This document shows, in pieces, positions 25,007-63,875 of a DNA stretch of 64,000 bases (the first letter of the stretch is position 1; each line of letters starts with the position of its first letter). The DNA lies in the NCBI RefSeq assembly GCF_001194135.2, contig NC_068998.1:27874342-27938341 (forward strand). Reading direction: 5' to 3'. The position numbers were made by a program, and so were the translations under genes. The stretch is from Octopus bimaculoides (lineage: Eukaryota). The notes beneath the pieces are model-generated. The model saw only the letters and a program-made list of their open reading frames with translations. It was not told where the DNA came from and searched no databases.

Positions 25007-25417
25007 ATATTGTTAGGTTTGGGGATGGTCATCCTTTGCCAATTAAACACACGCACTATTTATTTGATCTTCAATTTAATTTAATTAGTATTATTATTTT
25101 TTGTCAGTTTATTTGTTCGTCAAATTCTTTTTTCTGTCCCATGCTCTTGTCCTGTCTATTTCATTTTGTCGAAGGACAAAATGGAAAGGGAGAACAAGAG
25201 GAGACACATGGGACAGAGAGTCGTTGAAGAGGTCGCAGAAAGTGTGACGAAACAACTTTGACAGACAAATAATCTAACGATAACACTAATAAAACTAAAG
25301 TGAAGATCAAATAAATAGTGCACGTGTTTAACTGGCAAAAGATGATCAACCCCAAGTATAATATCTGTTTCAACACACGTTTGCACATCAAATATCTTGC
25401 AAAACAAATACATAAAC
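25007..25417. mobile_element. Foldback (MITE-like) element, copy 1
   Basis: 25007-25100 and 25270-25364 are inverted repeats (ttgggg...actatttatttgatcttca / tgaagatcaaataaatagt...ccccaa); second copy at 41446. Confidence 0.75.
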
Positions 25418-26094: not shown

Positions 26095-26835
26095 ATGCAA
26101 CACTTCATCCACCACATGCAGTTCTCTGGCTACAACCAAAAGGGACAGGAATAGAGTGTACAAAGGAGCCACCGCTAAGTACAAGGCCATCATAGAGAGT
26201 GATGCAAAGGGGATCTGCCCGCTATACAGGAGTAAATCATGGAACAGCGCAAGAAAGACCAGAAAAAAGATAGTTATGGCCAACTCATGGTATGACAGCA
26301 AAAAATATCAGTGTCATGTTTGTTGATGCTATCCCTGGCAGTGAACTAGCATACTTTTTTTTAGAAAAACATTAGATAAGGCCAATCTACAGATTAAAGA
26401 AGTAGAAAGGTCTGGTGCTCCTATAAAATCCCTGATCTGTAGAACTTCGATAGGTCCCCATGTACGGAGAACAATTGTATTGTTTGTAGGATGAACCCAC
26501 AGGTTAACTGTAAGGATAGGAATATGAGTGTATACCTTACGATGTACTGAGGGACGGTGCAGAAGCATGACAACTACTTACATTACAGAAACTGCACACA
26601 GCATAGGACAACGTTTAGGTGAACACTGGCCAGAGCACAAAGAAGAGAAAGGCTCGTCAGTGCTCTACCAACATACTCAAGCAGAACATAGAGACTCAGT
26701 CTATAGCATAGAGGCCAAAGTACTATCAACGCATAGAACTGACACGACACTTAGACAAATCACAGAGACTATACACATAGCAATAGACAGACCGAGCCTC
26801 AACAGAAAACACGAATGGAACAATAACACCCATCA
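26095..26835 (+). mobile_element. Penelope-like element C-terminus with GIY-YIG endonuclease
   Basis: VYTLRCTEGRC...TTYITETAHSIGQRLGEH...SVLYQHTQAEH...LRQITETIHIAIDRPSLNRKHEW (ORF 26528-26860). Confidence 0.8.
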
Positions 26836-26879
26836 TCACACCACACAACATGACGACTAAAGACTAAAGAGTGAAAGGA

Positions 26880-28800
26880 GAAAATGATAAGAGCTCATCC
26901 AAAAAAGAGAGTGCCTACAAGAAATGCAGAGGCGAGGTCCAATGTGTTCTGAGACAGATGAAGGAGGCTTGGTGGTCTTCGAAGCCTACTGAACGCCAAA
27001 AACTGCAGACAGAAAGGATTCTAAAACCTTTTATGATGGCCTCAAGAAAGTGTATGGTCCTCAAGAGCACGGTGTTACTCTGATTTTTTCATCGAATAGA
27101 GAGACACTGTTGACTGACAAATCTGACATCCTGAAACGATGGAAAGATCACTTCGAAGCCGTGTTGAACTCCACCTCAGTCACTAATGATGATGTCAAAA
27201 TATCTATTCCACAGCACGCTGAAATACCAGAACTGTCTCTGGAGCCAACCTTCCTGGAAGAAGTAAACTCTATTAAACAGATCTATTATGGTAAAGCGCC
27301 TGGTAGGGATGCTGGCCCTCCTGAAATCTACAAGTATGGTGGGCAGAAGTTTTTTAAGAAGCTGCATAACCTCTTCATAAACATTTAGATGGTACCACAG
27401 GACTTCAAGGATGCCTCAATTCAACATCTTTATAAGAACAAAGGAAACAGAAGTGTCTGTGATAATCATTGTGAAATATCGCTTCTGTCTATTGCTGATG
27501 AGATTCTTGCTCGACTCGTTCTTCACAGGATCATCAAACACGTTGTAAATGGTATCTACCCAGAATCACAGTGTGGATTTTGCTCTGGTCGTGGCACTAT
27601 CGACATGATCTTTTCCCTCCGACAGGTCATGGAGAAGGTACGTGAGAAAAATCATGAGTTGTTCTTGATATTTGTTGACTTTGCTAAGGCCTTTCACAGT
27701 GTTAACTGGCAAACACTATGGAGAGGTCTGAAAAAGCTCGGTGTACCTGACAGGATGTTGAATATTATCATCTCCTTTCATGAGGGAATGAAGGCTGGTG
27801 TCGTGTCCGGTGGGGAATCTTCGGCTTCCTTCGATATTACAAACAGCACTAAGCAAGGTTGTGTTATGGTCTGTTTGCACTCTTCTTTTCAGTAATGCTG
27901 AAGTATGCTTTTGGTGACATACAAAGTGGTGTCAAATTCCAGTTTCGAACAAGTGGTGGACTATTCAATCATCAGCGTTTCAAAGCCAGAACTCTGTTAC
28001 GCACCAGTATCATTCGTGATCTACTTTTTGCAGACGACGCTGCACTAGTAGCGACCTCTTTAGAGAAAACTCAGGAACTTTTAGACCGGTTTTCTGTTGC
28101 ATGTAAACCTTTGGTTTGACCATCAGCATAAAGAAGACGGAAGTAATCCACCAAACTTGCCCTACTCCTAAGCAAATTTGAGGTATCCAGCAGAGGCAAC
28201 CGGTTCACAATTTTCCTGATACTCCTACACAGATTGATGGGAAAAGCCAAAATTATGTGAAATCATTTACATATTTTGGTAGTAAAGTGAATTCGAGCGC
28301 TTCCCTTGATGAAATCGCCAACCGTCGTGCAAAGGCAGCCAACGCATTTGGCAAAATCTGTCATCGCCTTTGGAATGAAATGAATCAAACTTGAATCGTG
28401 GATATCCTATAGATGACATATTAACCAACTAGACATCTTCTACAAAGACTTTCTGAAGACAATCTGCGGTTATTCTCCAAAAGACAGAGTTTTTAATGCC
28501 GACTTGTTTTATAAGTGTAAGATTGGTGGAATCGAGAGCTTCCTTATGCAATCACAATTGCTCTGGGCTGGCCATGTCGTCAGAATGAGTGACGAAAGAA
28601 TACTCAAAGTCCTCATGTACAGCCAGCTTGAGAGTGGGCACAGGAAGATTGGTCGACCATGGCTCAGATATAAGGACAAGCTGAAGACTAACCACTTAGA
28701 AATGAAGATAGCTCACAACACCTTTGAGCGAACAGCCTTGGAACGAACAAAATGGAGATCGTTGTGTCAAAATGGTATTAGAAGCTTCGTTACAACCAAC
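26880..28800 (+). mobile_element. RTE (BovB-like) LINE, 5'-truncated RT region
   Basis: KAPGRDAGPPEIYKYGG; PQDFKDASIQHLYKNKGNR; PESQCGFCSGRGTIDMIFSLRQ; FVDFAKAF; TKQGCVM; DLLFADDAAL; QLLWAGHVVRMSDERI. Frameshifted. Confidence 0.95.
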
Positions 28801-28839
28801 ATTAACAGGCTTTACGAATACTCTGAGACCTTTGGAAGC

Positions 28840-30140
28840 ACGATACTATGTGTCCCATCTCCAAGAAATGCAACCTCTCTAATCCTACTAACACTCGCCC
28901 TATTACTCTCACTTCTGATATATTCAAGACACTGGAGACCGCCACTTATAACGATGTCCTCCAACAATTTCGTTTTTTCTTTCTTTTTAATGTCAACAAG
29001 TATGATTTTTGAGATGCTAGATTTACTGGTGATCTGTTTTCTCTGTCACCCACTAGAGGTCTGTTGTTTTAGAGGAATTTAATGAAACCAGTGTTATTGT
29101 CTTCGACATGAGTAAAATTTTCGACCAAGTCTGGCACGCTGATCTCCCGCCTGCCAACTGCCAACTAATGGACTCCAACTGTTTCTCATCTTTTGAATCG
29201 ATAACTTCTTATCTGAAGGTATCATTACCATGTGTGTGAACGGAGTTCTTTTTGTCCCTCATTCTAAAAATCTGGCGTACCCAGGCTTCGGTTTTATTCG
29301 CTGCTCCCTTCCGCAAATACATCAATGACTTATTTTCCCCCACATCCAACGACATTACTTTTACGCAAATGACACAACCCTTCATTTCTTCATAACATTT
29401 TCCAATCATAAATCTCCACTCGCAACCGAGACACCACATATCAAAACATACTGACTCTAAGAACAGAAACCTCAGAAGCATCCTCTAATGGTGATATGCT
29501 GATCTTGTTTCCTTCCCAGTAGTCAAGGAAGCGTATGACACTCATATCAGGAAAACATCATCGCACCTCACCCCCTTAATCATAAGCAGCACTCAGTTAG
29601 GGGCCTCTAAATTGCTCCAATTTTGGGGGTCTCGCTGTTACCGAGGATTTCTCCTGGCGGTAAGACATCTTTAACGTAGCTATTGCCGCATATTAACAAC
29701 TGGTCTTTCGCTTGAAGGATAGAAGATACTTCATCCCACAGCAGTTATTGATACTCTACAGATTTCAACTGAAGCCCATAGCGGAGTATTACGCACACAT
29801 CAGGGACGTTGCAGTTTCTGCACCTACAGACATCATCTGGCCTAAAATCGTGCGATCTCATTTCTCTGCCATTTCAACTACAACTACAAAGCTCTACTCC
29901 TTCGGTCTGGTAGGCTCGAACCACTTACAATCAGGCATTTATTTTCTTCACGTCTCTTTCCCTCCCATCGCCTTTGTAGTATCTACTATCCCTATTTATG
30001 GCCCTTCTCTAATCACCACGCCCAGTCCTTCCCTCCTCAGAGCGTCGGCCTTCTAGAATTCCCTTTCTGCTCATATCTTTCCCGCACATGTTGAGTGAGA
30101 AAGATTTAAGAGAAACATTAATGACTGCAATCTCACCGGT
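28840..30140 (+). mobile_element. L2/Crack-type (CR1 group) LINE RT fragment, decayed
   Basis: PISKKCNLSNPTNTRPITLTS, VFDMSKIFDQVWHADL (29099-29146), KYINDL, KPIAEYYAHI. Confidence 0.75.
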
Positions 30141-34194: not shown

Positions 34195-36895
34195 TTGCAC
34201 AGCTTCTAACGCTGGAGATATACTACGGTGTCAGCTGCTCGCTACCAGTGAACTAAGGTAACACCCCTTATTTTTAAAGCACCATCCAGAGTATTCGAGC
34301 GGTTCCAAACAGTGCTGTTTTCTGCAAGTGTTCCACCCTTATTGCAGTCCCTATTTGTTCCATATACTTCTCAAGATTGTTACTCACTGTTTCCAGGGCT
34401 CCAACAATTATTGGTACTACTACCACCTTTTTCAGCTACCACAACTGCTTAACCTCCCAAACCTACCTGTTATATCTATCGACTTTTCTTTCTTCTTTAT
34501 CGCATACCTTGTTGTCACCTGGGCATGCTATTTCTATGATCCAGCATCGTTTGCTTTCTTTCTCAAGTAACACTATGACTGGTTTCCTATTCTCTCTCTC
34601 ATGGTCGCACTGAATCATAAAATCCCATAGGATCTTTGCATCATCATTTTCGATGATGCCTTCGGGTTTATGTTCGAACCACATTTTTGCTCTGTTCAAG
34701 TCCATACATGTTGTAAAGTGTCTAATGGACAATCCTTGCTATATTGTCATAATGTCTCTTATATTCTTTCTGGGCTAGCGGCATACATTGACTGGTAATA
34801 TACCATAAGGTTTCACCATTTTCTTTACAAATTCTCCACTTATCACTTTCTGATGCGTTGTCTATTTTGTATTTGATCTAATTGGTTCTCAATGCTTGCT
34901 CTTGGGCAGCACATATTAGAGCCGCCGTTTCTGGTTTTAAATCACTTTTAGTCATCTATAGCCATCTTTTCTCTCTGTCTGCCTTATCTTCAGCATCCCT
35001 ATGAAATTGTCCATGCATTCTTTTCTTTAACCACCTATTTTCAGGTTCATGCATTCTCAAGTGCTTGTACAGTGCTTTATCGTTGCAATCTTCCATCTTA
35101 CACAAGCCTGACCTTCTTACTTCCAATAACAGTGGTTCTGCTCTAATGTTGTGTTCGCTTCCAGTCAGTCCTCTTCCCCCTCTTTTTCTTGGTAATACAG
35201 TCTGTCTGTGTCGCTTTTTGGGTGGAGTATCCCATATCTAATCAGTAACTTCCTTGTCTTTCTGTCTAAGCTGTTTAATTCGTCTACTGTCCATGCGATC
35301 ATCCCTGCTCCATATCTAAGGAATGAAACTGACCAGGTGTTGATAGCTTCAATCTTATTCCGTCCGTTTAATTTCGACTTAAGGATCAATCTCAGTCTAC
35401 GCAAGTACTCCACTTTAAATTTTTCTGTCATTTCTTTATCCATCAATTTATCCATTTCCAATGTCCCCAAGTTCTTATAGCCTGTCTCTTCTATCTGCTT
35501 CATACCCCACCCCGACGGTATCGCTAGTCCGGCCATACATTTGATTTTTCCTCTCTTCAAGACTAAAACATCACACTTTTTCAGTCCGGATTCCATTCTG
35601 ATAACAGTACTGATAGTATACACCGTATCAACGAGGGAACTGACTTAGGATTCATCTTTACCATAAAGTTTGAGGTTATCCATGAATAACAAGTGGTTGA
35701 CTTTTTGCTGGCAGCTCTTGAATGCGCACCCAGCCTTTGCTTTCCTCAGAATCAGTGTTAGTGGTATCATGCACAGTACAAAGATCAGTGGGGACAGGTA
35801 GTCCCCTTGGAAGATGTCTCTCCTGATTTCTACTGCCTCTAAACTTCTTCCGTATGCTGTCAGGTCCGTCCTCCAATTCCCCATACTTTTTCCAAGCAAT
35901 CGCTCAACATTCGATGCAATCCTAAACAGGTTCATACATTCCATAATCCAAGAATGTGGGATCATATCGCACGCCTTAGGATAGTCGATCTATGACATGG
36001 GTAAGTTACTTTTCCTCCTCTTGCAGTCTCTAAGTACAGTTTTGTCAATCAGGAGTTGATCCTTGGTACCTCTGCACTTACGTTTGCAACCCTTCTGCTC
36101 ATGTAGCAGGAATCCATTTTCCCCCAGATGTTCGTACATTGACTCTGCGACTATTCCAGTCAATAATTTTCACATAAGTGGCAAATAGGATATCGGCCTA
36201 TAATTGTCTACCGTATTGTCTTTTCCTATTTTTTCAAGCACAGCACTATCCTACCCAATGTCAACCAAGCTGGTGTTACTTGGTCGGCATTTAACAAGGT
36301 GTTGAGTTGCGCAGCTATTCGTGTATGACATTCACGAAATCTTTTGATCCAGTAGCGTTGAACTCCATCTGATCCCGGGGCCTTCCATTTGCTCATTTTT
36401 TTACTGATTTCCTTCACTTCCCTAACTGGAATGACTAGTTCTGCCTGTTTTGGACAGACTACTGTTTGTTTCAGTTCTTGCAACCATTCAGCATCCTTCT
36501 TGTGCTCTTTGTCTTTGCTCCAGATGTCACTGAAAAACCTTTGACTTTCATTGTTATCTGGTATCAACTTTTCATCTGTACACACTCCATTTATTTCCTT
36601 ATAGAATCTCTTCTGATCTACTCTGAATAACCTATTCTGGTGGTAACCCTTCATTCTTTGGTCGTATCTTACCATCTTTGCTTTCTTTGGAACGAGGCAC
36701 TGTTTCAGTTCCTCCATTACCATTCTCAGGCCCTTTCTTTCCATATTACACTTCCTATTCAGTGCCTTGTATTTTTGTTCGCTTTTAAGCTCCCTCTTTT
36801 CTTTTCGGTCTAACAGAAATGTCCTTCGAGAGCATATTTAACCCCGCCTGTATTCTTCTTTTCCACCATGGATCTTTTCGTTTCTTTTTCTTGAC
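34195..36895 (-). mobile_element. R4/Dong-type non-LTR retrotransposon (RT, zinc knuckle, RLE, 3' UTR), 5'-truncated, ending in (TAA)n
   Basis: LFRVDQKRFYKEI; WKAPGSDGVQRYWIK; IFQGDYLSPLIFVL; NHLLFMDNLKLY; NKIEAINTW...LDRKTRKLL...HPKSDTDRLY; KILWDFMIQCDH...KPVIV...IIEIACP; PIIVGALETV. 3' UTR followed by minus-strand (TAA)n at 34152-34187. Confidence 0.92.
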
Positions 36896-39459: not shown

Positions 39460-40160
39460 AATATGTTGTAGCCTAAGCTCTTCCGTGTACCCTGCTTCTC
39501 CCAACTACTGCACATTTGTGCTCTAAATATAAAGGTGTTCTATCCTGCAGTCAATTGTCTGCTTTCCACTGTCACAGCTGCTACTGTAAAAAAATAAACA
39601 CCTTCGAGAGAAATTCAAAACAATCAGATACTCCATCTCAGCCAAATGTGACCGGGTAAGGTAGCTGGTTGGGCACTTGAAATAACAATGCCAAGAAACT
39701 TGCAGAAGTTACGAAAATTGTAGAAAGTTTTGAGGACAAGAGTATTTTGGTGCAGAGAGCGGGAAAAGCTGTGCAAAATCCTGAGATTAGGACTATCCTC
39801 ACCCAAATCTGTTCAAAATATCGACAGTCAAAAGTGTTGATTTTGAAAGCTGAGTCAACTGCCTTCACTGTCTATGATGCTCACAAAAGTCTCAAAGAAG
39901 TGAGATTCAACGAAGACCCATGTTGCATCATGAATTACATTGATTTTAAATTCAATAAAAACCAAATTAATTCGATAATTCAACTAATGAACCACAAACT
40001 TACATCTGCGGAATATGCAGATCTGATACAATCCCAGGCGACACCCTCTGCTGTAGAATGCAGTTTTTCGACGTTGAAAAAATCCTTGCAAAAGACGAAT
40101 TTTTTGCCTACAAATACAAAACATTATATCATATTGTACTATAATAAATTTCCACAATAG
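39460..40160 (+). mobile_element. hAT-type transposase C-terminal remnant (CGGBP1-related type)
   Basis: PKLFRVPCFSQLLHICALNIK (degenerate C-x2-H), PSQPNVTG*GSWL (cf. P-Q-PVITRWGTWL), QATPSAVECSFSTLKK...YIILYYN. Confidence 0.65.
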
Positions 40161-40390: not shown

Positions 40391-40455
40391 TGGAAAAATA
40401 ATGTTTTAACTCTCTGAGCGGGAGATATACAGTAAAAGTACCGAATAGTAAAGTT

Positions 40456-40757
40456 TATATGTCAACAGAATGTGCCAGTCCTGTAAAGGACGAAGTTACT
40501 GTTGTTTTAGCCCCAGGAAAACATCTATTCCAGCTGGGCATCGACACACAGTCTGTGTCCGTATAGCATCTGCAAGAGATGTCATTGCTCCTATGTGAGT
40601 ATCACGTAAGGCTAGAGATGAGAGCGCTGACCTCCTTTGTAAATGCTATACGGACACAGACTGTGTGTCGATGGTCAGCTGGAAAAGATGTTTTCCTGGG
40701 GCTAAAATAACAGTAACTTCGTCCTTTACAGGACTAGCACATTCTGTTGGCATATAT
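40456..40757. mobile_element. Young MITE-like element with ~114-bp near-perfect inverted arms and a 73-bp spacer
   Basis: 40456-40569 is the reverse complement of 40643-40757 with few mismatches; TA-rich flanks; diverged relative at 63936-64000. Confidence 0.85.
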
Positions 40758-41043
40758 ACATNNNNNNNNNNNNNNNNNNNNNNNNNNNNNNNNNNNNNNN
40801 NNNNNNNNNNNNNNNNNNNNNNNNNNNNNNNNNNNNNNNNNNNNNNNNNNNNNNNNNNNNNNNNNNNNNNNNNNNNNNNNNNNNNNNNNNNNNNNNNNNN
40901 NNNNNNNNNNNNNNNNNNNNNNNNNNNNNNNNNNNNNNNNNNNNNNNNNNNNNNNNNNNNNNNNNNNNNNNNNNNNNNNNNNNNNNNNNNNNNNNNNNNN
41001 NNNNNNNNNNNNNNNNNNNNNNNNTATATATATATATATATAT

Positions 41044-41385
41044 AGGTGTAGGCGTAGCTGTGTGGTAAGAAGCTTGCTTCCCAACTATACAGTTCAGGGT
41101 TCAGTTCCACTGCGTGGTACCTTCGACTAGTCTTTTCTATAGCCTCAAGCTGACCTTGTGAGTGGATTTCGTATGTATATATATGTGTCTGTGCTTCACC
41201 CCACCCCCATTACCGCTTGATAACTGGTGATGGTGTGTTTACGTCCCCGTAACTTAGCGGTTCGGCGAAAAGATGCCGATGGAATAAGTATTAGGCTTAG
41301 AAAATAAATCCTGGGATCGATTTGTTCGACTAAAGCCCTTCAAGGCGATGTTCCAACATGGCTGCAGTCAAATGATTGAAACAAT
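41044..41385 (+). mobile_element. SINE family A, near complete
   Basis: Head, short (TA) centre, and 3' half ending gcagtcaaatgattgaaaca. Confidence 0.9.
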
Positions 41386-41445
41386 TACACAGATACTTGC
41401 CAGAAGTAAAGAGTATTTTTGAAATTACATTGATAGGAGAAATCA

Positions 41446-45112: not shown

Positions 45113-46164
45113 TATATATTTATGTATGTGTATATATATATATATGTATATATACCAAATGATAAGAAGACAAAATTCTTTAAGACATCTTTAATGATTC
45201 ATTATTCTTTGTCTTATTATTATTTGAATTATTTACCATTCGCCAAACTCATTTTACGATGTGAACGTCGTGAAACAAAGATTTTCTACACCAGAGGAAT
45301 TCCGGCATTGGCCTGGAATCCGATAATGGTGATAGCCCAGTATTCTCGTTGAGTACTTCTCTGGAAACACCCTAACGTTACACCCTACCAGAACGTAAGA
45401 TTATATATATNNNNNNNNNNNNNNNNNNNNNNNNNNNNNNNNNNNNNNNNNNNNNNNNNNNNNNNNNNNNNNNNNNNNNNNNNNNNNNNNNNNNNNNNNN
45501 NNNNNNNNNNNNNNNNNNNNNNNNNNNNNNNNNNNNNNNNNNNNNNNNNNNNNNNNNNNNNNNNNNNNNNNNNNNNNNNNNNNNNNNNNNNNNNNNNNNN
45601 NNNNNNNNNNNNNNNNNNNNNNNNNNNNNNNNNNNNNNNNNNNNNNNNNNNNNNNNNNNNNNNNNNNNNNNNNNNNNNNNNNNNNNNNNNNNNNNNNNNN
45701 NNNNNNNNNNNNNNNNNNNNNNNNNNNNNNNNNNNNNNNNNNNNNNNNNNNNNNNNNNNNNNNNNNNNNNNNNNNNNNNNNNNNNNNNNNNNNNNNNNNN
45801 NNNNNNNNNNNNNNNNNNNNNNNNNNNNNNNNNNNNNNNNNNNNNNNNNNNNNNNNNNNNNNNNNNNNNNNNNNNNNNNNNNNNNNNNNNNNNNNNNNNN
45901 NNNNNNNNNNNNNNNNNNNNNNNNNNNNNNNNNNNNNNNNNNNNNNNNNNNNNNNNNNNNNNNNNNNNNNNNNNNNNNNNNNNNNNNNNNNNNNNNNNNN
46001 NNNNNNNNNNNNNNNNNNNNNNNNNNNNNNNNNNNNNNNNNNNNNNNNNNNNNNNNNNNNNNNNNNNNNNNNNNNNNNNNNNNNNNNNNNNNNNNNNNNN
46101 NNNNNNNNNNNNNNNNNNNNNNNNNNNNNNNNNNNNNNNNNNNNNNNNNNNNGTGTGTGTGTGT

Positions 46165-46350
46165 CCCAACATCGCTTGACAACCGATGCTGGTGTGTTTA
46201 CGTCCCCGTAACTTAGCGGTTCGGCGGAAGAGACCGATAGAATAAGTACTAAGCTTACAAAGAATAAGTCCTGGGGTCGATTTCTTCGACTAAAAGGCGG
46301 TGCTCCAGCATGGCCGCAGTCAAATGACTGAAACAAGTAAAAGAGTAAAA
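46165..46350 (+). mobile_element. SINE family A, 3' half
   Basis: atcgcttgacaaccgatgctggtgtgtttacgtccccgtaacttagcggttcggc...gactgaaacaagtaaaagag. Confidence 0.9.
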
Positions 46351-46368
46351 GAGTGTATATATGTGTGT

Positions 46369-46409
<41 letters not shown>

Positions 46410-46918: not shown

Positions 46919-46995
<77 letters not shown>

Positions 46996-47190
46996 TTACT
47001 TGTTTCAGTCATTTTACGGCTGCCACACTGGAGTACTGCCTTTAGTCGAGCAAATCGACCTCAGGGCTTATTCTTTGTAAGCCTACTACTTATTCTATCG
47101 GTCTCTCTTACCGATGCGCTAGATTACGGGGACGTGAATACACCAACATTGGATGTCAAGCGATGGTGGAGTGCGGGATAAACACGGACA
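46752..47190. mobile_element. SINE family A head (+), (GT)n, then a 3' half in the opposite orientation
   Basis: Head 46752-46912 on plus; 46992-47170 is the reverse complement of the 3' half. Confidence 0.8.
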
Positions 47191-47235
47191 CAAAAATATA
47201 TGCACCTTTATTTTCTCTCTCTCTGTTTATTTTTG

Positions 47236-47929: not shown

Positions 47930-50790
47930 TCACGAAACCTCCTCTGACATTTGATGGATGTAGGGAGTTTGACGTTGCTCCCCTAATCGATGTTTCTTGC
48001 CTAGAGGTAGGTTCATCTGGAACTCTTGACAGAAGGAGATCTAGTTTTGCTTTGAAAGAGTCTACATCCACGCCATGCAGGTCTCTCAGAATATTGAAGA
48101 GCTATGGGCCTTTGAAGCCCAAGCTGTTGCATATCTGGTCCTGTATCCTGATGGCAATGTTGGGAACTTTGGTGCCATGAAGTAGCACCCCGTCCTGCTG
48201 TTTGTGTAAGTAACAATGCCAAAGTTTGGGACAAGTTTTTCTAGGATTTTCCAGATGTGTAGTAACTGCATATCTTTCCCGCTAGGGAGTAGAGTCTTAA
48301 CTCTTTCAGTCTCTCCCAGTAGCTGATATGTCGCATTGTATCGAGCTTTCTTGTGCAGCTTCGATGGGTCACCTCGAGATCCATCGTTAATTTTACATTG
48401 ATTGGTGGCCACAGCTGGGAGTAGTAATCCAGACGGCTGAGAACGAAAGTCCTCCATAGGAGCATCATGGTTTCCTTTTCTCTTGTTTTGAAATTTCGAA
48501 GGATCCACCCGGCCACACGTCTTCATTTTATTGCCGACTTGTTAATGTGCACCTGGAAAGATGCATAATTACTCATGTCAACGGCCATTGTGTTGGTAGC
48601 GCAGGGCTTGGAGTCTTCCAGTATTAAACTGTATGTTATTTTCCTCAGCCCACCTGTATATTGCTTCCAACACATGTTGCAGATCCACAATGTCTCCAGG
48701 GTTCTGTATCCTCAGAGAGACTTTTGTATCGTCTGCATAGCTAGCAAAAGTAGGTACTTGAGCAGCTGGGGGCATGTCAGGAAGGGCCACTATGAATAGC
48801 AGGGGCCCCAGGACAGTGCCCTGTGAAACACCACTCATTATTTGTGTTTTCTTGGAGGTGGCCCTATTGACCACCACTACCTGACCACCACTATCTTTTA
48901 GAAGATATCTTTTATTGACCACCACTATCTTTTAGAAAGTCATGTAGCCATTCTCCAAGTTTTCCAAATATGCCAAGATTTCGGAGCTTGTGACAAACTA
49001 TACCTCGATCGACTTTGTCAAAGGCTTTTGCAAAGTCGAGGTATATCACGTCCACATTTGAGTTGGTGGGCAGCTGCTTTAGCACGCAGTCGTAATGCTG
49101 CAGGAGCTGTGTCGGGCAGTTTCTACCAGATCGAAAACCATGCTGGGTGTCAGTCAGAAAGTCATTTTCTTGAAGGAATGCGAAGAGTTTCTTGCGGACT
49201 ATTCGTTCCATGACTTCGATGATGCATGAGGTCAGAGAGATAGTCCTATAGATTTTAGCATCTGCTCAGCTTCCTCCTTTATGGATAGAGCATATTATTC
49301 CGTCCTTTAGTTTATCCGGGAGCTTACCATTTGCGAGGAAACTCTAAAAAAGTAGTTGCAATGGGTTTTCAAGGACTCGTTTGCATGACTTGGGAAAGAC
49401 TGCTGGGAATTCATCAGGGCCAGCAGCAGAGTTTGCGTCTGTATCATCTCTTGCTAGCATTACATCTTTTTCTTCGATGATCTAAACAATTGTTACTGCC
49501 TCCAGTTCAGCTTCTGTAGTAGTAAAGAATTCTACAGGTTTGCTAACTTACATGTGCCGTAGAGGTGGAGTGAAGACACTTTTGAACTGTTCATTCAGTG
49601 TTTCAATTATCCTCATTGGGTTTCCCGTGAGGAGCCATCTTTTTGGAGGAGAGGCCTTACCCTGTAATGCATAGACGTAGTCTCCTTGGCGTACCTAAAG
49701 AAGGCTTTAGGGTCTGATTTTATATTTCTCATGACCCAGACTCCTCTGTCTGATCTTTCCTTCTCGTGGGACTGCTTCAGTTGTTTCTCAATCTCCAGCA
49801 GTGATGTTTCCAGGCGGGCATTCCCACTGCCGTTGAGATCTCTGTCGAGGTGGTTTGCAATCTTTGTACGCCGTTTCATAAGAACTTTCCTCTTCCTGGG
49901 AATCTTGTTTTTATGTGCAGTGTCTCTCTGAGACAAAATTGTAGTATATGGCTTGCATTACAGACATGAATGTTTTCAATTTCATGTCTATGTCAGGTGT
50001 AGAGAGACATTGGGACCAGTCCTGTTTAATGATCTCTTTCACAATCGATTTCCAGTCTGCTTTGTTGTAGTTCAGATTGGATAGGTTTTGGGTGCTTTTC
50101 ATAGGCTGCATGTCTGTAGGTTCCTTTGGTCTATACATGATCAGCTCTATTATGTTGTGATCCGAGATTAAAGTCAGTGTCACTTTCACATTGTGGATGA
50201 GATCCACATTGTTTGTGAGGCAGAGATCAAGTATATTATTTGCCCTAGTTGGTTGGAGTATTATTTGCTTCTTTTATAAATTGTTGGTGAGGTTGAGGAG
50301 GGATTCCACCTGACTTTGCTCACATCACGTCATTCCTGAGAGGAAAAGGCCTTCGGGCCATTTCACATTGGGCAGGTTGAAGTCTCCCATGAGAAGTACA
50401 CTGATGCGTGCTTCTATTTTGGTTAAGACCTCTTTTATTCTTGCAAGGTAGTCTTTGAATAGGCCCGTGTGATTTGGGGCATCTGGTGGGTGATATGTAA
50501 AACATATAACTATCTCAAATTGTCTTGTATGTACAAGTAGTGTGTCACACACTGAGTTTGAGTGTGACAAAAAGATCTGGGGTATGAGATCTTCACGGAT
50601 GTACGTTGCAACTCCACCGTGGCTCCTGTCTTTTCTATCACTTTGCAATACGACGTACTTTGGTAAGTGTATTTCTGCATCTGCGATGTCGAGTTTTAAG
50701 TGCATTTCAGTGAGTGCTCTGCATAAGGATTGATTGCATATCACTAGGTCTCTCGAGAAGGTAATTTAAGTTCTGTTACTGAGTTGCAAC
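47930..50790 (-). mobile_element. CR1-group LINE ORF2 (APE endonuclease plus RT), nearly complete, frameshifted
   Basis: RKDRSHGGVATYI; LLMGDFNLP; SDHNIIEL; QHGFRSGRNC; YLDFAKAFDKVD; GVSQGTVLGPLLF; YADDTK; TFVLSRLDYYSQLW. Confidence 0.93.
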
Positions 50791-50819
50791 AGTCCTCTCT
50801 CACACACACTCTCTCTCTC

Positions 50820-53881: not shown

Positions 53882-54381
53882 ACTATCTGCCAGGCTCTTA
53901 TTTAAATCCCTAATGGACCACTTGAATACACACATGCTCTCCAGGGACCGAAAGTAGTATGTTCTGTTTTGCCTAATTTCTCTGTGAGACCCTATTCATA
54001 ATCAATTAACAGTCGCAGATCGATAGCGAAACAACTCTGACAACCATTTTAGAATGGTAAATCCGTAACTAAGCACAGCTGCTTTCACAATCAATAAAAA
54101 AAATCATATAGCTAGACAACCTGGCTTTCACAATCAATAAATAATAATAGATCTCGTAGGTCCGACAATGAATGAAGTATTTTTAAAAAGAGACAGGAAA
54201 CCATGTAGGCATTACAATCTCAAAACAGATTTCATCAGAATTAAGGAATGGTAGATTAGCGGTTAAACATCGCAGAATGGTATATAACAGTAGCCCGTAG
54301 AGATTATTCCTATCTACAAGTGCGATCCCCATGAATGAGAGAGGCGGCTGTTCCAGCGCATCTCCCTCGCCATCGTCCGGG

Positions 54382-54547
54382 CAGGGCCAGCCCTAAGGTT
54401 GCTGGCGCCCGGGGCAAGCTGAACTTCGGCGTGTACAAGTTGACGGTTGTGGAAATTTCTTTGTTTTTGTCACGCCCTCCTTGACGCCCCCTAGCACATG
54501 GCACCCCGGGCGACTGCCCGAGTTGCCGGTACCTTGAGCCGGCCCTA
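54382..54547. mobile_element. hAT-type MITE, 166 bp
   Basis: Ends cagggccagc / gccggcccta; 8-bp TSD cgtccggg (54374-81) and cttccggg (54548-55). Confidence 0.85.
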
Positions 54548-55389
54548 CTTCCGGGGCAGGACCTTTTCCATTTTGTTTAGTGGGACCATGGGGTGGTCTG
54601 AATTACAGGAAATTGTACGTTCTGCTCCTTAATGTAAAAACACAAAGAATTCTAGATTTAGAAGAAAAGATTAGACAGAAAGACAGTAGCAAAACGGCTT
54701 TATTGTTATAATGTTTAAAGATGGAAGATCAGTAGCTTTATAACAAAGATTAAAGAACAGCAGATCAGTAACTTTAGCGCGAGTTATGACAAGACTTGGT
54801 GGCAGTTTATATACACATTTATTGCTTCAATTATACAAGGCTTTAATGAAAAGCAGACAGCATCAAATTATAAGAATATCATATTTATAGGAGTTGAAAA
54901 CCGTGATGATTAAACTGATCAGCACATTGCTGCGAAAACGTATGGTGTTGATTCTTCATCATCTCCGAGTTGCTAAATAGCTGTGAAAATAATTATCAGG
55001 AAAATCGCGCTGGTCTGAGTATGAAGCCGTAAAAACAGACTCAAGAGCAGAATTTGGCTAGGACTGTAGCGAGAGGAGTCCGAATTCTCTCTGCTTAGTT
55101 GTACCAAAAACAACTGTTTAAAATGCCGTCGCTGAAGGAATTTTCTAGAAATATCACGCGATCACTTAACCCTGATTGGTTGAAATTGAGATCTGCACGC
55201 ATGATACACTCGAAAATAAAAATGAAGTCAACCGCCATGTAACTAAATAAAACACATCTAATAATTATTAAGTAAGTGGCAAATCAAAATTTGAAACATG
55301 CCTGTCATTAATGGTTGATTAGCTTCTAAACAAATTTAGGTCTCACAAATATTTTAGAATATGGTAGATCTAAAACTAAATAACGTAGC

Positions 55390-56800: not shown

Positions 56801-57449
56801 GACATACATACATTCATATATGCATTATATAATGTATGCATGTATATGTAAATCAACGTTCACCACCACCACCACCACTGTATACATGATCAAAGCAACC
56901 AGCATCAGCACCATAACCAAAACAGCCACAACTCTTACCCACCCAACAGCTCCTTCACTAACAACAGCACCATTAGTAGTTGAACGAGATCAGTAACTCC
57001 ACCTAAAATAAGAGACAATGACGTGAGATACGCTAGTGTATTTCAATAGCTGAATAAAATGCCTTTGATCTGAGGTGAATGCGGATTGACTTGAGATTTA
57101 ACAGCAACAATATGTTCATCGCCACCACCGACAATACCCCATCACCTTCCCCACCATCACCGCTAACAGCACCACCAAAACCTGTTCAGCCAACGTCTTC
57201 ACTACCAACCCATGAAAATTTTGAATTACTAGCGACAACAATAATTTTATCTGCACGTTAGCAATGTCTATAACAGACTGGGCCGGTTCAAGGTACCGGC
57301 AACCCGGGCAGTCGCCCGGGGTGCGAAATTTTTTCCCACGAGAGTTTCGGAGTCTAGTTGAGCTCAACTATCAAACTAGTGTCCACCTAGTCACGAAAAT
57401 ACACTGGTTGAGTTCAGTGGAAAATGTGCGTAATAGCAAAATCTAACTG

Positions 57450-58248
57450 GGATCTTTATGGTTTGACGGGCAACATTTTTTTATGTAGTGTTTTTGGTAC
57501 CGAAACACTTTCAAACTTCGAAAACTTGTATATTTTTTGTTATAGAACAGATAAAAAATATTGTATTCGAAGTTATTTCATGTAAAAAAAATTGTCGTAT
57601 TTCGGTAATTTCAACCAATCACTGACGTCTATTGAGGTGAAAACTATTACGCCGTGGAATGTAAACAACGGTGTCAGGGGATCTTTTCCCTTGAATAAAA
57701 TTAGTGCCGCTGTTTGTCAACAAAAACTATCCGTTGTCAACAACAACTATCAGCGGTATATATTTCGTTTGTCACTGTTATTTATGACATCGTTCGTGTG
57801 TTTGTACTGGTTTTAGCTTTAGGGTTTTAGGGTTAGGGTTCGGGTTAGTTTTAGGATTACGGTTAGGGTTATGATTATTTTTGCCATAACCTTAACCCTA
57901 ACCCTAACCCTAACCCGAAACCTAACGCTAAAACCCTAACCCTAACTCTAAAACCCGAACCCTAACCCTAAAACCCTAAACCCGTACTAGGGAATAATGA
58001 TATAATTAAACAGGGAATAACAAACTTGACACCGAACAGCACTAACTGTATTCAGCTGAATAGACGTCAGTGATTGGTTGAAATTACAGAAATACGACAA
58101 CTTTAACATGAAATAACTTATTAAGAAGTAATTTTTGTTAAGAAGGCTAAGAGAAAAAGATGTTTTATATGACACATTCTACCAGTATCCCAAGTTTGAA
58201 AGTGTTTCGTTAAGAAAACAAGTGTTGGCCGTCAAACCATAAAGATCC
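57450..58248. mobile_element. Merlin-like foldback MITE (799 bp) with internal telomere-like repeats
   Basis: TIR ggatctttatggtttgacgg(g/c)caaca (25/26 match); perfect 8-bp TSD tctaactg (57442-49, 58249-56); imperfect arms of ~190 bp. A GG terminus plus 8-bp TSD suggests Merlin. Confidence 0.75.
57813..57985. repeat. Degenerate (TTAGGG)n followed by (CCCTAA)n
   Basis: 57813-57871 is TTAGGG-type and 57886-57984 is CCCTAA-type. Confidence 0.9.
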
Positions 58249-61163
58249 TCTAACTGTTCTAAACGGGTTGATAGGGGTGACAAATGTGAAATTTAATGTA
58301 TAAAGTGAATGAAGAGTTGCTCACCGATGATGCCATAAGTGTTGTTAATTTGCGTAATTTACTCGAAAATGTAAATTAGTGTAGTTTTCTAATATTTTGA
58401 CTGATTTTGTACATTCCTAAAATGTTGGTGTTGATCTGGAAAAATCGTAATCAATATGGCGTTGTGTCGTATTGCACCCTTCTTATATATACCAATGGGT
58501 ACATGCAGTATCACTAATCTAAGTCTGAGCATAGGTACCTAATGTTAGCTCCATATAGAGATAGTGCTCAATTGCTCTTGTAGTAACGCCGTGCGCATGC
58601 GTAGTCTTACGCATGCGTAGAATTAAACAACCAAACTTTCCCGCTTTAATCTTTCTCTTTTACGGTCGGCCGACCATGAGCATGGACGTGTGCTAAAGCT
58701 GTCTCTACATCTTTCGGACTTACACTCGACAGCTCGCTCACAACTACAGAACAACGTCCCAACAACTATGCTCATACACCCAGAAGCTGTAACAACAAGA
58801 ACTAATGATGTACATATTTACCACCTAAATAAAGTGTTGTTTAAGTTGATAGTCTGGAGTTCAGCGTTCCGTTATATTCTAAGTTTATAGTAGGAAAGTC
58901 AGGTATACAATCTAAAGATGTATAACCCACTTTCCTATAATCTATAAGAACGATGGGGAACGGGAATGTAGTGCTTATGTGAGACCTGCTATGCTGTACT
59001 CACAGTGGCATACACCATTCTATGCCTAACTGGCTGTACTGTAGTAGGTGGATTTTCAAAGTAAGCTCTGATTGGCTGTATGCAAATGAGTTCATTACTG
59101 AGTCCGGAACTCTCGTGGGAAAAAATTCGCGCCCGGGGCGCCATGTGCTAGGGGGCATCAAGGAGGGTATGACAAATGCAAGGAAATTTCCACGACCGTC
59201 AGCTTGTACACACCGAATTTCAGTTTGCCCGGAGCGTCAGCAACCCTAGGGCCGGCCCTCGTAACAGACATACGCTACTAACATTGTATGTCAACGCAAT
59301 GGAATATGTGTGTATGTGTGTTTACCGTGTGCGTGTTTGAACGTGTGTGTATTTGTGTATTTGTATGTGTGCGTTTACGTGTGTATATGTTTTTCCTATA
59401 TGGATGTGTGTATTTGCGCGCGCTGTGTGTGTGTGAGAGAGAGAGAGAGAGAAAGAGAGAGTGAGTGAGTGAATGTAGTGTAAAGTTTTTTTGTTTTTTT
59501 TTTGGTGGGGGGGGGNNNNNNNNNNNNNNNNNNNNNNNNNNNNNNNNNNNNNNNNNNNNNNNNNNNNNNNNNNNNNNNNNNNNNNNNNNNNNNNNNNNNN
59601 NNNNNNNNNNNNNNNNNNNNNNNNNNNNNNNNNNNNNNNNNNNNNNNNNNNNNNNNNNNNNNNNNNNNNNNNNNNNNNNNNNNNNNNNNNNNNNNNNNNN
59701 NNNNNNNNNNNNNNNNNNNNNNNNNNNNNNNNNNNNNNNNNNNNNNNNNNNNNNNNNNNNNNNNNNNNNNNNNNNNNNNNNNNNNNNNNNNNNNNNNNNN
59801 NNNNNNNNNNNNNNNNNNNNNNNNNNNNNNNNNNNNNNNNNNNNNNNNNNNNNNNNNNNNNNNNNNNNNNNNNNNNNNNNNNNNNNNNNNNNNNNNNNNN
59901 NNNNNNNNNNNNNNNNNNNNNNNNNNNNNNNNNNNNNNNNNNNNNNNNNNNNNNNNNNNNNNNNNNNNNNNNNNNNNNNNNNNNNNNNNNNNNNNNNNNN
60001 NNNNNNNNNNNNNNNNNNNNNNNNNNNNNNNNNNNNNNNNNNNNNNNNNNNNNNNNNNNNNNNNNNNNNNNNNNNNNNNNNNNNNNNNNNNNNNNNNNNN
60101 NNNNNNNNNNNNNNNNNNNNNNNNNNNNNNNNNNNNNNNNNNNNNNNNNNNNNNNNNNNNNNNNNNNNNNNNNNNNNNNNNNNNNNNNNNNNNNNNNNNN
60201 NNNNNNNNNNNNNNNNNNNNNNNNNNNNNNNNNNNNNNNNNNNNNNNNNNNNNNNNNNNNNNNNNNNNNNNNNNNNNNNNNNNNNNNNNNNNNNNNNNNN
60301 NNNNNNNNNNNNNNNNNNNNNNNNNNNNNNNNNNNNNNNNNNNATTCGTTTTCTACATGCTCTCGAAAACTAGGCCCCTCATTCAGGCCAGAAAACACGT
60401 CTCCTCGAATTAGTAGCTGACTTTCCACCAAATTCAAGTTAGACGGCCAACATGAGATGGTTTTGCTCCTTCGCATAAATTCCAGCACCGCATCCAACAG
60501 AAGTCGTCGAAGGCTTGTTTATTAACACACAATAACCACTGACTCATTGATATAATGTTCCTCTTTCTGCTTCTACCCTTACTACAGTCTTTTTTTTTTC
60601 TTCTGTTTTTGTAAGCTGCACACCATCCTCCACCCATTTTCTTCTCCCGCCATCCTTCTCTCTCGCCAGATCTCAACTTAATATCATTATTTCCTCCTGG
60701 ATTTCTGGAATCCCATGACCACCACATTTTCCTGCAGACATCGATTTACAGAAATTAATTGCCTCTCTTCATCAGAATTGATTAAATAAACACGTTTTTA
60801 ATAAAGTCCTATTTTTTAGGAATGCTTCTATAATGCTTTAAAAAATGTCGCCATTTACCACCATTTTAACATTAAGCATGGGTCCACGCCTCCTCTAATT
60901 AACTTTAAGCGTTGGCAATAAAATTATATGAAAGCTATAAATAACACCGTAGAAAACACAGTATATGTGCTTTGTTTATCTGCTGGATTTGCTGTGAGAT
61001 AACATTTAAGAAAACTCCTTATTAACGCTGTGTGTTAAAACACCTGAAAGTCATAGACCAGGCGAGACAACTCGCCTCGGATCAAACCAAAGAGATTTAC
61101 TGGTAAAACAATCTGAGCACTTTGTAATAGATACCTATTACATAATGTCATTAGATGTGTATG

Positions 61164-62961: not shown

Positions 62962-63113
62962 AAAGAAGCTTGCATCCCAACCACATAGTTCTGGGTTCAG
63001 TCCCACTGCGTGGCACCTTAGGCAAGTGTCTTCTACTATAGCCTCGGACCGACTAAAAGCCTTGTGAGTGGATTTGGTAGACGAAAACTGAAAAAAGCCT
63101 GTCGTATATATAT

Positions 63114-63148
<35 letters not shown>

Positions 63149-63153
63149 CATAG

Positions 63154-63236
<83 letters not shown>

Positions 63237-63435: not shown

Positions 63436-63675
63436 AATATATATATCAATAAAATGTTTATATTTATTGCTAAAACGCTAAATGGATATTAGTCCGTGTG
63501 AGTGAATGCGTGTGTGCTTGTGTGTGTGTGTGTGCGCGTGTGTTGTGCATATGCGTGCATGCGTATTTGTATGTGCATGCGTGTATGTATACATAGTTGC
63601 GCGCGCGCGCACACATACATACATACATACATACATGCATTTACACACACAAATATGTATAATATACATATCTAT

Positions 63676-63837
63676 AGGCGCAGGCATGACTGTGTGGTAA
63701 GAAACTTGCTTCCCAACTACATGGTTTCTGGGTTCAGTCCCACTGCGTGGAACCTTGGGCAAGTGTTTTCTACTATAGCTTTGAGCCGACCAAAGCCTTA
63801 TAAGTGGATTTGGTAGACAGAAACTGAAAGAAGCCCG

Positions 63838-63840
<3 letters not shown>
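63676..63840 (+). mobile_element. SINE family A head followed by (TA)n
   Basis: ggcgcaggcatgactgtgtggtaagaaacttgcttccc...gaaactgaaagaagcccgtc. Confidence 0.9.

Positions 63841-63875
<35 letters not shown>

What the first reader, a model, noticed from the sequence alone, without database searches (positions are those of the whole stretch)
57270..59268. Three-layer nest of DNA transposons with all three TIR pairs and TSDs preserved
Seen: hAT-type MITE (8-bp TSD [a/g]taacaga) contains a MULE-like element (~28-bp TIR, 9-bp TSD gcccgggg[t/c]), which contains a Merlin-like MITE (26-bp TIR, 8-bp TSD tctaactg). The insertion order is directly readable. Inference: since the outer ends remain intact, the 2-kb composite could move as one unit and carry the inner elements and telomere-like repeats.
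Basis: partly seen in the sequence, partly recalled or inferred. Interest (0 to 1): 0.74.

Follow-up and report, generated by a model that had tools for sequence, protein, structure and literature searches.

The report
Three nested non-coding DNA transposons
Three dead-looking, non-coding cut-and-paste transposons sit one inside another in an octopus-like genome; this is a normal sight in repeat-rich genomes, and nothing shows that the 2-kb package ever moved as one piece.

Summary
At 57270-59268 there are three concentric pairs of terminal inverted repeats (TIRs), each flanked by its own target-site duplication (TSD).

- **Outer:** a 166-bp MITE, TSD 8 bp with 7/8 matching.
- **Middle:** a ~1.0-kb element, TIR ~31 bp, TSD 9 bp with 8/9 matching.
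- **Inner:** a 799-bp foldback element, TIR 26 bp, TSD 8/8.

A second, uninterrupted copy of the outer MITE lies 2.7 kb away at 54382-54547. It reads straight across the middle element's insertion point, so it serves as a paralogous empty site.

Two diverged copies of the outer MITE in another cephalopod's contigs are also uninterrupted. None of the three elements has a coding frame or any protein homologue.

The superfamily labels (hAT, MULE, Merlin) fit TSD length and terminal bases. They cannot be proven, because no matching transposase was found.

The idea that the composite moves as one unit has no support:
- both outermost ends of this copy carry substitutions in the terminal two bases;
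- the copy differs by about 14% from its neighbour;
- all three other family members lack the insert.

No whole genome could be searched, so junction copy number is untested.

The one mild curiosity is the inner foldback, whose centre holds mirrored TTAGGG-like arrays. Verdict: an ordinary nested TE insertion, low interest.

The parts
57270..57277 (+). Left TSD of the outer MITE (ATAACAGA)
   Evidence: It matches 59261-59268 at 7 of 8 positions and lies directly outside the point where homology to copy 2 ends.
57278..57322 (+). Left 45 bp of the outer hAT-like MITE. This includes the left TIR (CTGGGCCGGTTCAAGG...) and the left 9-bp TSD of the middle element (57314-57322, GCCCGGGGT).
   Evidence: It aligns to 54547-54503 of copy 2.
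57323..57441 (+). Left part of the middle (MULE-like) element, with the left TIR GCGAAATTTTTTCCCACGAGAGTTTCGGAGTC
   Evidence: (I10: 57327-57354 against 59100-59127, 93% complementary).
57442..57449 (+). Left TSD of the inner element (TCTAACTG)
   Evidence: It is identical to 58249-58256.
57450..58248 (+). Inner 799-bp foldback element. The TIR is GGATCTTTATGGTTTGACGGGCAACA, and the arms are homologous to about 57665 and 58040.
   Evidence: (I2, I4, I6, I11), (arms 78% identical over 345 aligned nt; DNA fold -187 kcal/mol, z = -15.8).
57588..57649 (+). Best-kept block of the left arm. It mirrors 58043-58104 at 89% and contains CCAATCA and TGACGTC.
   Evidence: I2. Its function is unknown; a transposase-binding or promoter remnant is only an inference.
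57804..57985 (.). Centre of the inner element: a degenerate (TTAGGG)n array (57804-57878) facing a (CCCTAA)n array (57886-57985). The two arrays share a mirrored pattern of variant units.
   Evidence: (I1, I3, and I8, a 29-nt perfect mirror at 57818-46 / 57952-80). This is the only telomere-like repeat in the window.
58249..58256 (+). Right TSD of the inner element (TCTAACTG)
58257..59130 (+). Right 874 bp of the middle element, including the right TIR (ends ...GGGAAAAAATTCGC). It is non-coding.
   Evidence: The longest open frame is 87 codons, and the six-frame query found no homologue.
59131..59139 (+). Right TSD of the middle element (GCCCGGGGC)
   Evidence: (D10). It matches the left TSD at 8 of 9 positions.
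59140..59260 (+). Right 121 bp of the outer MITE, ending ...CCCTAGGGCCGGCCCTC
   Evidence: (87% identical to 54512-54383).
59261..59268 (+). Right TSD of the outer MITE (GTAACAGA)
54374..54555 (-). Second, uninterrupted copy of the outer MITE (54382-54547, 166 bp) with its own 8-bp TSD (CCCGGAAG / CCCGGACG). It serves as the empty site for the middle element.

Best explanation
This is a record of three successive cut-and-paste insertions of non-autonomous DNA transposons in an octopus-like genome.

1. A 166-bp GC-rich MITE with hAT-type features inserted and duplicated 8 bp.
2. A ~1.0-kb non-coding element with ~31-bp TIRs then landed 45 bp inside that MITE and duplicated 9 bp. This fits a Mutator-like transposase.
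3. A 799-bp foldback element whose TIR starts with GG landed 120 bp inside the second element and duplicated 8 bp. This fits Merlin, but not exclusively.

Each element must have been moved in trans by a transposase encoded elsewhere. All three now look like decaying relics.

Shown: the structures, the order of insertion, the empty site for step 2, the lack of coding capacity, and that the outer element belongs to a multi-copy family found in more than one species.

Inferred: which transposase superfamily moved each element, and that none is active now.
For: - TIR and TSD geometry of all three layers.
- Uninterrupted paralogue of the outer MITE at 54382-54547, with a different 8-bp TSD and a continuous sequence across the middle element's target.
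- The outer element minus its insert is exactly 166 bp, the length of copy 2.
- Two further diverged copies of the outer MITE occur in Logan contigs L010-L013 of another cephalopod, and homology ends at the same termini.
- There is no open frame above 87 codons, and a six-frame query of the middle and inner elements found no protein homologue among 5.8 billion proteins.
- TSD mismatches run 1/8, 1/9 and 0/8 from outside to inside, in line with the insertion order.
- TSD lengths and terminal bases match published definitions of hAT (PMC4316626), MULE (PMC6446971) and Merlin (PMC8101967).
- The host is octopus-like. A LINE reverse-transcriptase ORF at 27389-27895 has Octopus sinensis as its only named hit among 120 (79% aa), and LINE and SINE-like repeats are shared with O. 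sinensis locus L005.
Against: - No second copy of the middle or inner element was found anywhere, so their status as repeat families rests on structure alone.
- No transposase with matching TIRs was found, so the superfamily names are untested.
- The middle TSD can be read as 9 to 12 bp.
- The outer TIR in this copy is poor.
- The searches for other copies covered only the 64-kb window, about 80 kb of fetched contigs, a protein collection that samples cephalopod ORFs thinly, and collections that are not animal genomes. The negatives are therefore weak.
Confidence: 0.85

Rival explanations
1. One reading: the 2-kb composite is itself a mobile unit. A hAT transposase would recognise the outer ends and carry the inner elements and telomere-like repeats to new sites.
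For: - Both outer ends are present with at least 45 bp of native MITE sequence each.
- From general knowledge of hAT elements, 2 kb is within the size they can move.
Against: - The left end reads CT where copy 2 reads TA. The right end reads ...CCCTC where copy 2 and one foreign copy (L013) read ...CTG; the other foreign copy (L010) ends ...CCAGG.
- This copy and its neighbour differ at 21 of 166 sites (K2P 0.14), which marks them as old.
- The other three family copies seen, one in the window and two in another species, all lack the insert.
- No second copy of any junction was found in the window.
Confidence: 0.05
2. The inner element belongs to a Mutator/Foldback-type family, or another family with 8-bp TSDs, rather than to Merlin.
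For: - It is a foldback: long imperfect inverted arms with tandem repeats towards the centre and almost no unique middle.
- MULE TSDs span 8-11 bp, and one animal clade has 8 bp (PMC6446971).
- Foldback elements have been tied to Mutator (title of PMC3169594).
Against: It meets all three structural Merlin criteria: terminal 5'-GG, TIR of at least 24 bp, and an 8-bp TSD (PMC8101967). From my own knowledge, classical Drosophila FB elements make 9-bp TSDs.
Confidence: 0.3
3. The inner palindrome is not a transposon. It would be a local inverted duplication or an assembly artefact of a draft scaffold.
For: The window is a gapped draft with 11 runs of N, and palindromes can be assembly artefacts.
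Against: - The arms are only 78% identical with many indels, whereas an artefact would be near perfect.
- The ends are a clean 25/26 TIR flanked by a perfect 8-bp duplication of the host sequence.
- There is no N inside 57270-59268.
Confidence: 0.03

Closest known systems
Nested MITE / DNA-transposon insertions, as widely described in repeat-rich plant and animal genomes (for example nested MULE insertions in maize and rice, title of PMC3903597)
   Same: TIR elements sit inside TIR elements. Each keeps its own TSD, so the order of arrival can be read directly.
   Different: Nothing in kind. The only differences are the host (a cephalopod) and the particular families.
hAT-derived MITEs
   Same: The outer element has 8-bp TSDs in two independent copies, a short TIR and small size (166 bp). 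Copy 2 ends in TAGGG/CAGGG, which fits the YARNG terminus I recall for hAT.
   Different: No hAT transposase with this terminus was found, and the termini of the nested copy are mutated.
Mutator-like elements (MULEs) of animals
   Same: The middle element has a 9-bp TSD, inside the 8-11 bp range. Its 31-43-bp TIR is inside the reported 18-613 bp range (PMC6446971). It has a non-coding interior of about 1 kb.
   Different: No MURA-type transposase partner was found. The TSD length is ambiguous (9-12 bp). The assignment is made mostly by excluding other superfamilies.
Merlin MITEs and Foldback (FB-type) elements
   Same: The inner element has a 5'-GG terminus, a 26-bp TIR and an 8-bp TSD, as in Merlin (PMC8101967). 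Its long inverted arms end in tandem repeats, as in FB elements.
   Different: The tandem repeats are telomere-like (TTAGGG)n arranged head to head. No IS1595-type transposase was found. The 8-bp TSD differs from the 9 bp I recall for Drosophila FB.

Membership tests
hAT superfamily (outer element) | 8-bp target-site duplication | tested here: met
   ATAACAGA/GTAACAGA in copy 1 and CCCGGAAG/CCCGGACG in copy 2, each 7/8 matching. Definition from PMC4316626.
hAT superfamily (outer element) | Short TIR (5-27 bp) with a YARNG-type terminus | tested here: inconclusive
   Copy 2 reads TAGGGCCGGC / CAGGGCCAGC, which fits. The nested copy reads CTGGG / GAGGG, which does not. The YARNG motif is from my own knowledge. 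The TIR length range is from PMC4316626.
hAT superfamily (outer element) | An autonomous relative with the same termini that encodes a hAT transposase (BED finger plus hAT dimerisation domain) | not testable with these tools
   No animal genome could be searched. One ORF in the window that I suspected (39747-40160) has no Pfam hit and no homologue.
MITE (outer element) | Small, non-coding, TIR plus TSD, many copies | tested here: met
   The element is 166 bp. There are two copies in 64 kb, and two diverged copies at separate loci in another species' contigs. The true copy number was not measured.
Mutator-like elements (middle element) | TSD of 8-11 bp, most often 9 | tested here: met
   GCCCGGGGT/GCCCGGGGC, 8/9 matching. 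The empty site in copy 2 confirms the duplication. It can be read as 9-12 bp. Definition from PMC6446971.
Mutator-like elements (middle element) | TIRs, often long (18-613 bp reported in animal groups) | tested here: met
   About 31 nt with 1 indel and 2 mismatches, loosely extendable to about 43 nt.
Mutator-like elements (middle element) | A MURA-type DDE transposase in an autonomous relative with the same TIR | not testable with these tools
   The six-frame query of the element found no homologue, and no genome search was possible.
Merlin superfamily (middle element) | Conserved terminal 5'-GG | tested here: not met
   The element begins GCGAAA, or CGAAA under the alternative boundary. This is why Merlin is set aside for the middle layer, even though its TSD of 8-9 bp would fit.
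Merlin superfamily (inner element) | Terminal 5'-GG, TIR of 24-462 bp, TSD of 8-9 bp | tested here: met
   GGATCTTT... at both ends, TIR 25/26 matching, TSD TCTAACTG 8/8. Definition from PMC8101967.
Merlin superfamily (inner element) | A DDE_Tnp_IS1595 transposase in an autonomous relative with the same TIR | not testable with these tools
   No homologue was found. A metagenome scan with the 20-mer gave 4 bacterial chance hits whose matches run 20-22 nt, apart from one 32-nt stretch at 91% in L003.
Foldback elements (inner element) | Long inverted arms that contain tandem repeats, with little unique sequence between them | tested here: met
   The arms are 78% identical over 345 aligned nt, the tandem arrays are mirrored at the centre, and the DNA fold has z = -15.8.

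The most novel reading that the evidence does not exclude
The inner element may be a mobile foldback that carries a head-to-head (TTAGGG)n/(CCCTAA)n junction as part of the family itself.

The two arrays share the same variant units in mirror order, including a 29-nt perfect mirror, and they lie inside a clean TIR/TSD insertion. The telomere-like palindrome was therefore probably already aboard when the element moved.

Such a family would scatter interstitial telomeric palindromes through an octopus genome. These would be hairpin-forming and miRNA-precursor-like, and possibly fragile. The family could have been born from a sister-telomere fusion next to a single transposon end, or from an element whose long TIRs ended in telomere-like repeats.
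Probability: 0.25. Interest if true: 0.4.

Novelty: new member of a known kind. Interest (0 to 1): 0.14.

Why it matters
It matters little for biology at large. Nested DNA transposons with readable TSDs are routine in repeat-rich genomes, and they mainly serve to order insertion events in time.

- **Local value for annotation.** The locus gives exact ends for three cephalopod DNA-transposon families and a worked example of a paralogous empty site.
- **The inner foldback.** It is worth a short follow-up by anyone cataloguing interstitial telomeric sequences or MITE-derived hairpins in cephalopods. If its telomere-like core is a family feature, some interstitial telomeric repeats in these genomes would be transposon cargo rather than scars of chromosome fusion.

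Tried and rejected
I therefore did not use read laying, whose run ids must come from that tool, so there is no read-level or population check.

**2. Six-frame query.** A chimeric query of the open frames of the middle and inner elements, run against 5.8 billion proteins to fish out other copies, gave no hit. This is a weak negative. The same kind of search for the outer MITE found only 2 proteins, so cephalopod short ORFs are thinly sampled.

**3. Exact-pattern scans.**
- The inner TIR 20-mer in JGI metagenomes gave 4 hits, all bacterial-looking chance matches of 20-22 nt, apart from one 32-nt stretch at 91% in L003.
- The outer-MITE and inner-block patterns in prokaryotic genomes gave none.
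- The outer and middle patterns in viral contigs gave none.

**4. nhmmer within the window** found only outer copy 2.

**5. Sampling about 80 kb of fetched contigs** (L005-L009) around LINE relatives, including 20 kb of Octopus sinensis, gave no copy of any element.

**6. Possible hAT remnant.** I guessed that ORF 39747-40160 was a hAT transposase remnant. It has no Pfam hit and no homologue, so I dropped the guess.

**7. Rfam.**
- Nothing reached gathering score.
- In E-value mode only sub-threshold miRNA-hairpin look-alikes appeared on the telomere-like palindrome (23-46 bits against cut-offs of 49-135). I read these as generic hairpin matches.
- No tRNA was found.

**8. Literature searches** for transposons carrying head-to-head telomeric repeats, and for the run accessions, gave nothing specific.
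Full report
**What the window is.**
- The 64-kb window is a gapped eukaryotic draft scaffold with 11 runs of N and 39% GC. It is full of CA/GA/TA microsatellites and LINE fragments.
- A LINE reverse-transcriptase ORF (27389-27895) has an Octopus sinensis protein as its only named hit among 120 (79% aa).
- The O. sinensis locus L005 shares that LINE at 84% nt, and several ~200-bp SINE-like repeats at 74-84%.
- I take the host to be an octopus or a close relative. The exact species was not determined.

**Check of the observation.** The three layers exist as described.

| Layer | Coordinates | Length | TIR | TSD |
|---|---|---|---|---|
| Outer | 57278-59260 | 1983 bp | weak in this copy, 7-nt perfect core | ATAACAGA / GTAACAGA (7/8) |
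| Middle | 57323-59130 | 1808 bp | ~31 nt, 1 indel and 2 mismatches, loosely ~43 nt | GCCCGGGGT / GCCCGGGGC (8/9) |
| Inner | 57450-58248 | 799 bp | GGATCTTTATGGTTTGACGG[G/C]CAACA (25/26) | TCTAACTG (8/8) |

- Each TIR core occurs in the window only as its own pair, against 0.00-0.01 expected.
- A strict TIR+TSD scan of the whole window returns the inner element alone, and nothing in 20 shuffles.
- The middle element ends in GC and so does its flank. Its duplication can therefore be read as 9 to 12 bp, and 9 or 11 give symmetric ends.

**The empty site.**
- BLAST of the region against the window found a second copy of the outer element at 54382-54547 on the minus strand.
- That copy is 166 bp, which is exactly the length of the outer element once the middle element and one TSD are removed.
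- It is 87% identical and has its own 8-bp TSD, CCCGGAAG/CCCGGACG.
- It reads GTCGCCCGGGGTGCCATG without interruption where copy 1 carries the middle element.
- This shows that the outer element is a repeated mobile family making 8-bp duplications. It also shows that the middle element arrived later by an insertion that duplicated the GCCCGGGG[T/C] target.

**The outer family elsewhere.**
- An open frame through copy 2 was searched against 1.84 billion representative proteins and found two short ORFs.
- Their Logan contigs (L010-L013, runs SRR11869385/390/391, species unknown) share SINE-like repeats with the window.
- They hold two diverged copies of the same MITE at separate loci (L010-L012 carry one, about 76% identical to copy 1; L013 the other). 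Homology ends at the same termini, and there is no insert at the middle element's site.
- The family is therefore multi-copy and present in more than one cephalopod. Three of three other members are empty.

**No coding capacity.**
- The longest open frame in the nest is 87 codons.
- A chimeric query of all open frames of at least 20-28 codons from the middle and inner elements found no homologue among 5.8 billion proteins.
- All three elements are therefore non-autonomous.

**Anatomy of the inner element.**
- It is more than a 26-bp-TIR MITE. Its two halves align as inverted arms over about 345 nt at 78% identity with several indels.
- One 62-nt block (57588-57649 / 58043-58104) is kept at 89% (I2).
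- As single-stranded DNA the element folds into one long hairpin: -187 kcal/mol, z = -15.8.
- The centre holds a degenerate (TTAGGG)n array facing a (CCCTAA)n array.
- The arrays are true mirror copies and were not independently made. They share the same variant units in the same mirrored order (TTTAGGG TTTTAGGG TTAGGG TTCGGG), with 29 nt perfectly complementary (I8).
- This is the only telomere-like repeat in the window.
- The simplest reading is a deletion derivative of an element whose long TIRs ended in tandem repeats, as in Foldback elements. A sister-telomere fusion next to one transposon end is a more exotic possibility. Neither can be tested without other copies.

**Superfamily labels.** Published definitions were checked.
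- hAT: 8-bp TSD, TIR of 5-27 bp (PMC4316626).
- MULE: TSD of 8-11 bp, mostly 9, with TIRs of 18-613 bp in animal groups (PMC6446971).
- Merlin: terminal 5'-GG, TIR of 24-462 bp, TSD of 8-9 bp (PMC8101967).

How the three elements compare:
- The outer element fits hAT. Copy 2 ends in TAGGG/CAGGG.
- The middle fits MULE and fails the Merlin 5'-GG rule.
- The inner meets all three structural Merlin criteria, but it could also be a Mutator/Foldback-type element.

No transposase partner could be sought in an animal genome, so these remain structural assignments.

**Could the composite move?** I found no support for this.
- Compared with copy 2, the nested copy has a substitution in the terminal two bases at both ends. 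It reads CTGGG where copy 2 reads TAGGG, and ...CCCTC where copy 2 and L013 read ...CTG.
- It differs from copy 2 at 21 of 166 sites (K2P 0.14, 7 differences in CpG context), which marks both as old.
- No other copy of any junction exists in the window.
- The decisive genome-wide junction count could not be run.

**Verdict.** This is a real, cleanly readable, three-deep nest of non-autonomous DNA transposons. It is of a well-known kind and most likely inert. The mirrored telomere-like core of the inner foldback is a small curiosity that may be worth a genome-wide look.

Noticed in passing
window 40453-40759: A 307-bp near-palindrome (85.7% self-complementary) with arms of about 130 bp. It is flanked by TA-rich sequence and abuts an N gap. 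It looks like another foldback-type MITE, possibly of a TA-target family.
   Followed up: partly
window 25019-25355: A second, weaker palindrome (70% self-complementary over 368 nt). It may be an older foldback-type element.
   Followed up: no
window 41171-41387, 46153-46374, 46993-47201, 62963-63160, 63671-63872 and others: A repeat of about 200 bp occurs many times, usually next to microsatellites. It is shared at 74-84% with the Octopus sinensis locus L005 and at lower identity with Logan contigs L010-L012. It is probably a cephalopod SINE.
   Followed up: partly
window 26500-29100 (+), 35100-36800 (-), 48500-50800 (-): LINE fragments with reverse-transcriptase and endonuclease Pfam hits. 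The 27050-27895 frame is broken by one stop. The only named relative is an Octopus sinensis protein.
   Followed up: partly
window 58594-58625: Inside the middle element there are two tandem 16-bp units, CGCATGCGTAG(TCTTA/AATTA), preceded by GTG. The GCGCATGCG core resembles an NRF1-type promoter motif. It might be a captured or internal promoter.
   Followed up: no
window 57588-57649 and 58043-58104: The best-conserved block of the inner element's arms (89%) carries CCAATCA followed by TGACGTC, that is CCAAT-box-like and CRE-like motifs. It may be a transposase-binding or promoter remnant.
   Followed up: no
window 57806-57940: The telomere-like hairpin gives sub-threshold Rfam matches to several miRNA precursor families (23-46 bits, against gathering scores of 49-135). 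I read these as generic hairpin resemblance.
   Followed up: partly
window 57671-57680: GGATCTTT, the first 8 nt of the inner TIR, recurs inside the ~110-bp stretch that only the left arm has. This may be chance, or a trace of a further rearrangement.
   Followed up: no
window 59269-59515: Directly right of the nest is a GT/GA microsatellite tract ending in poly-T/poly-G, followed by an 828-bp N gap. The right-hand context of the nest is therefore not assembled.
   Followed up: no
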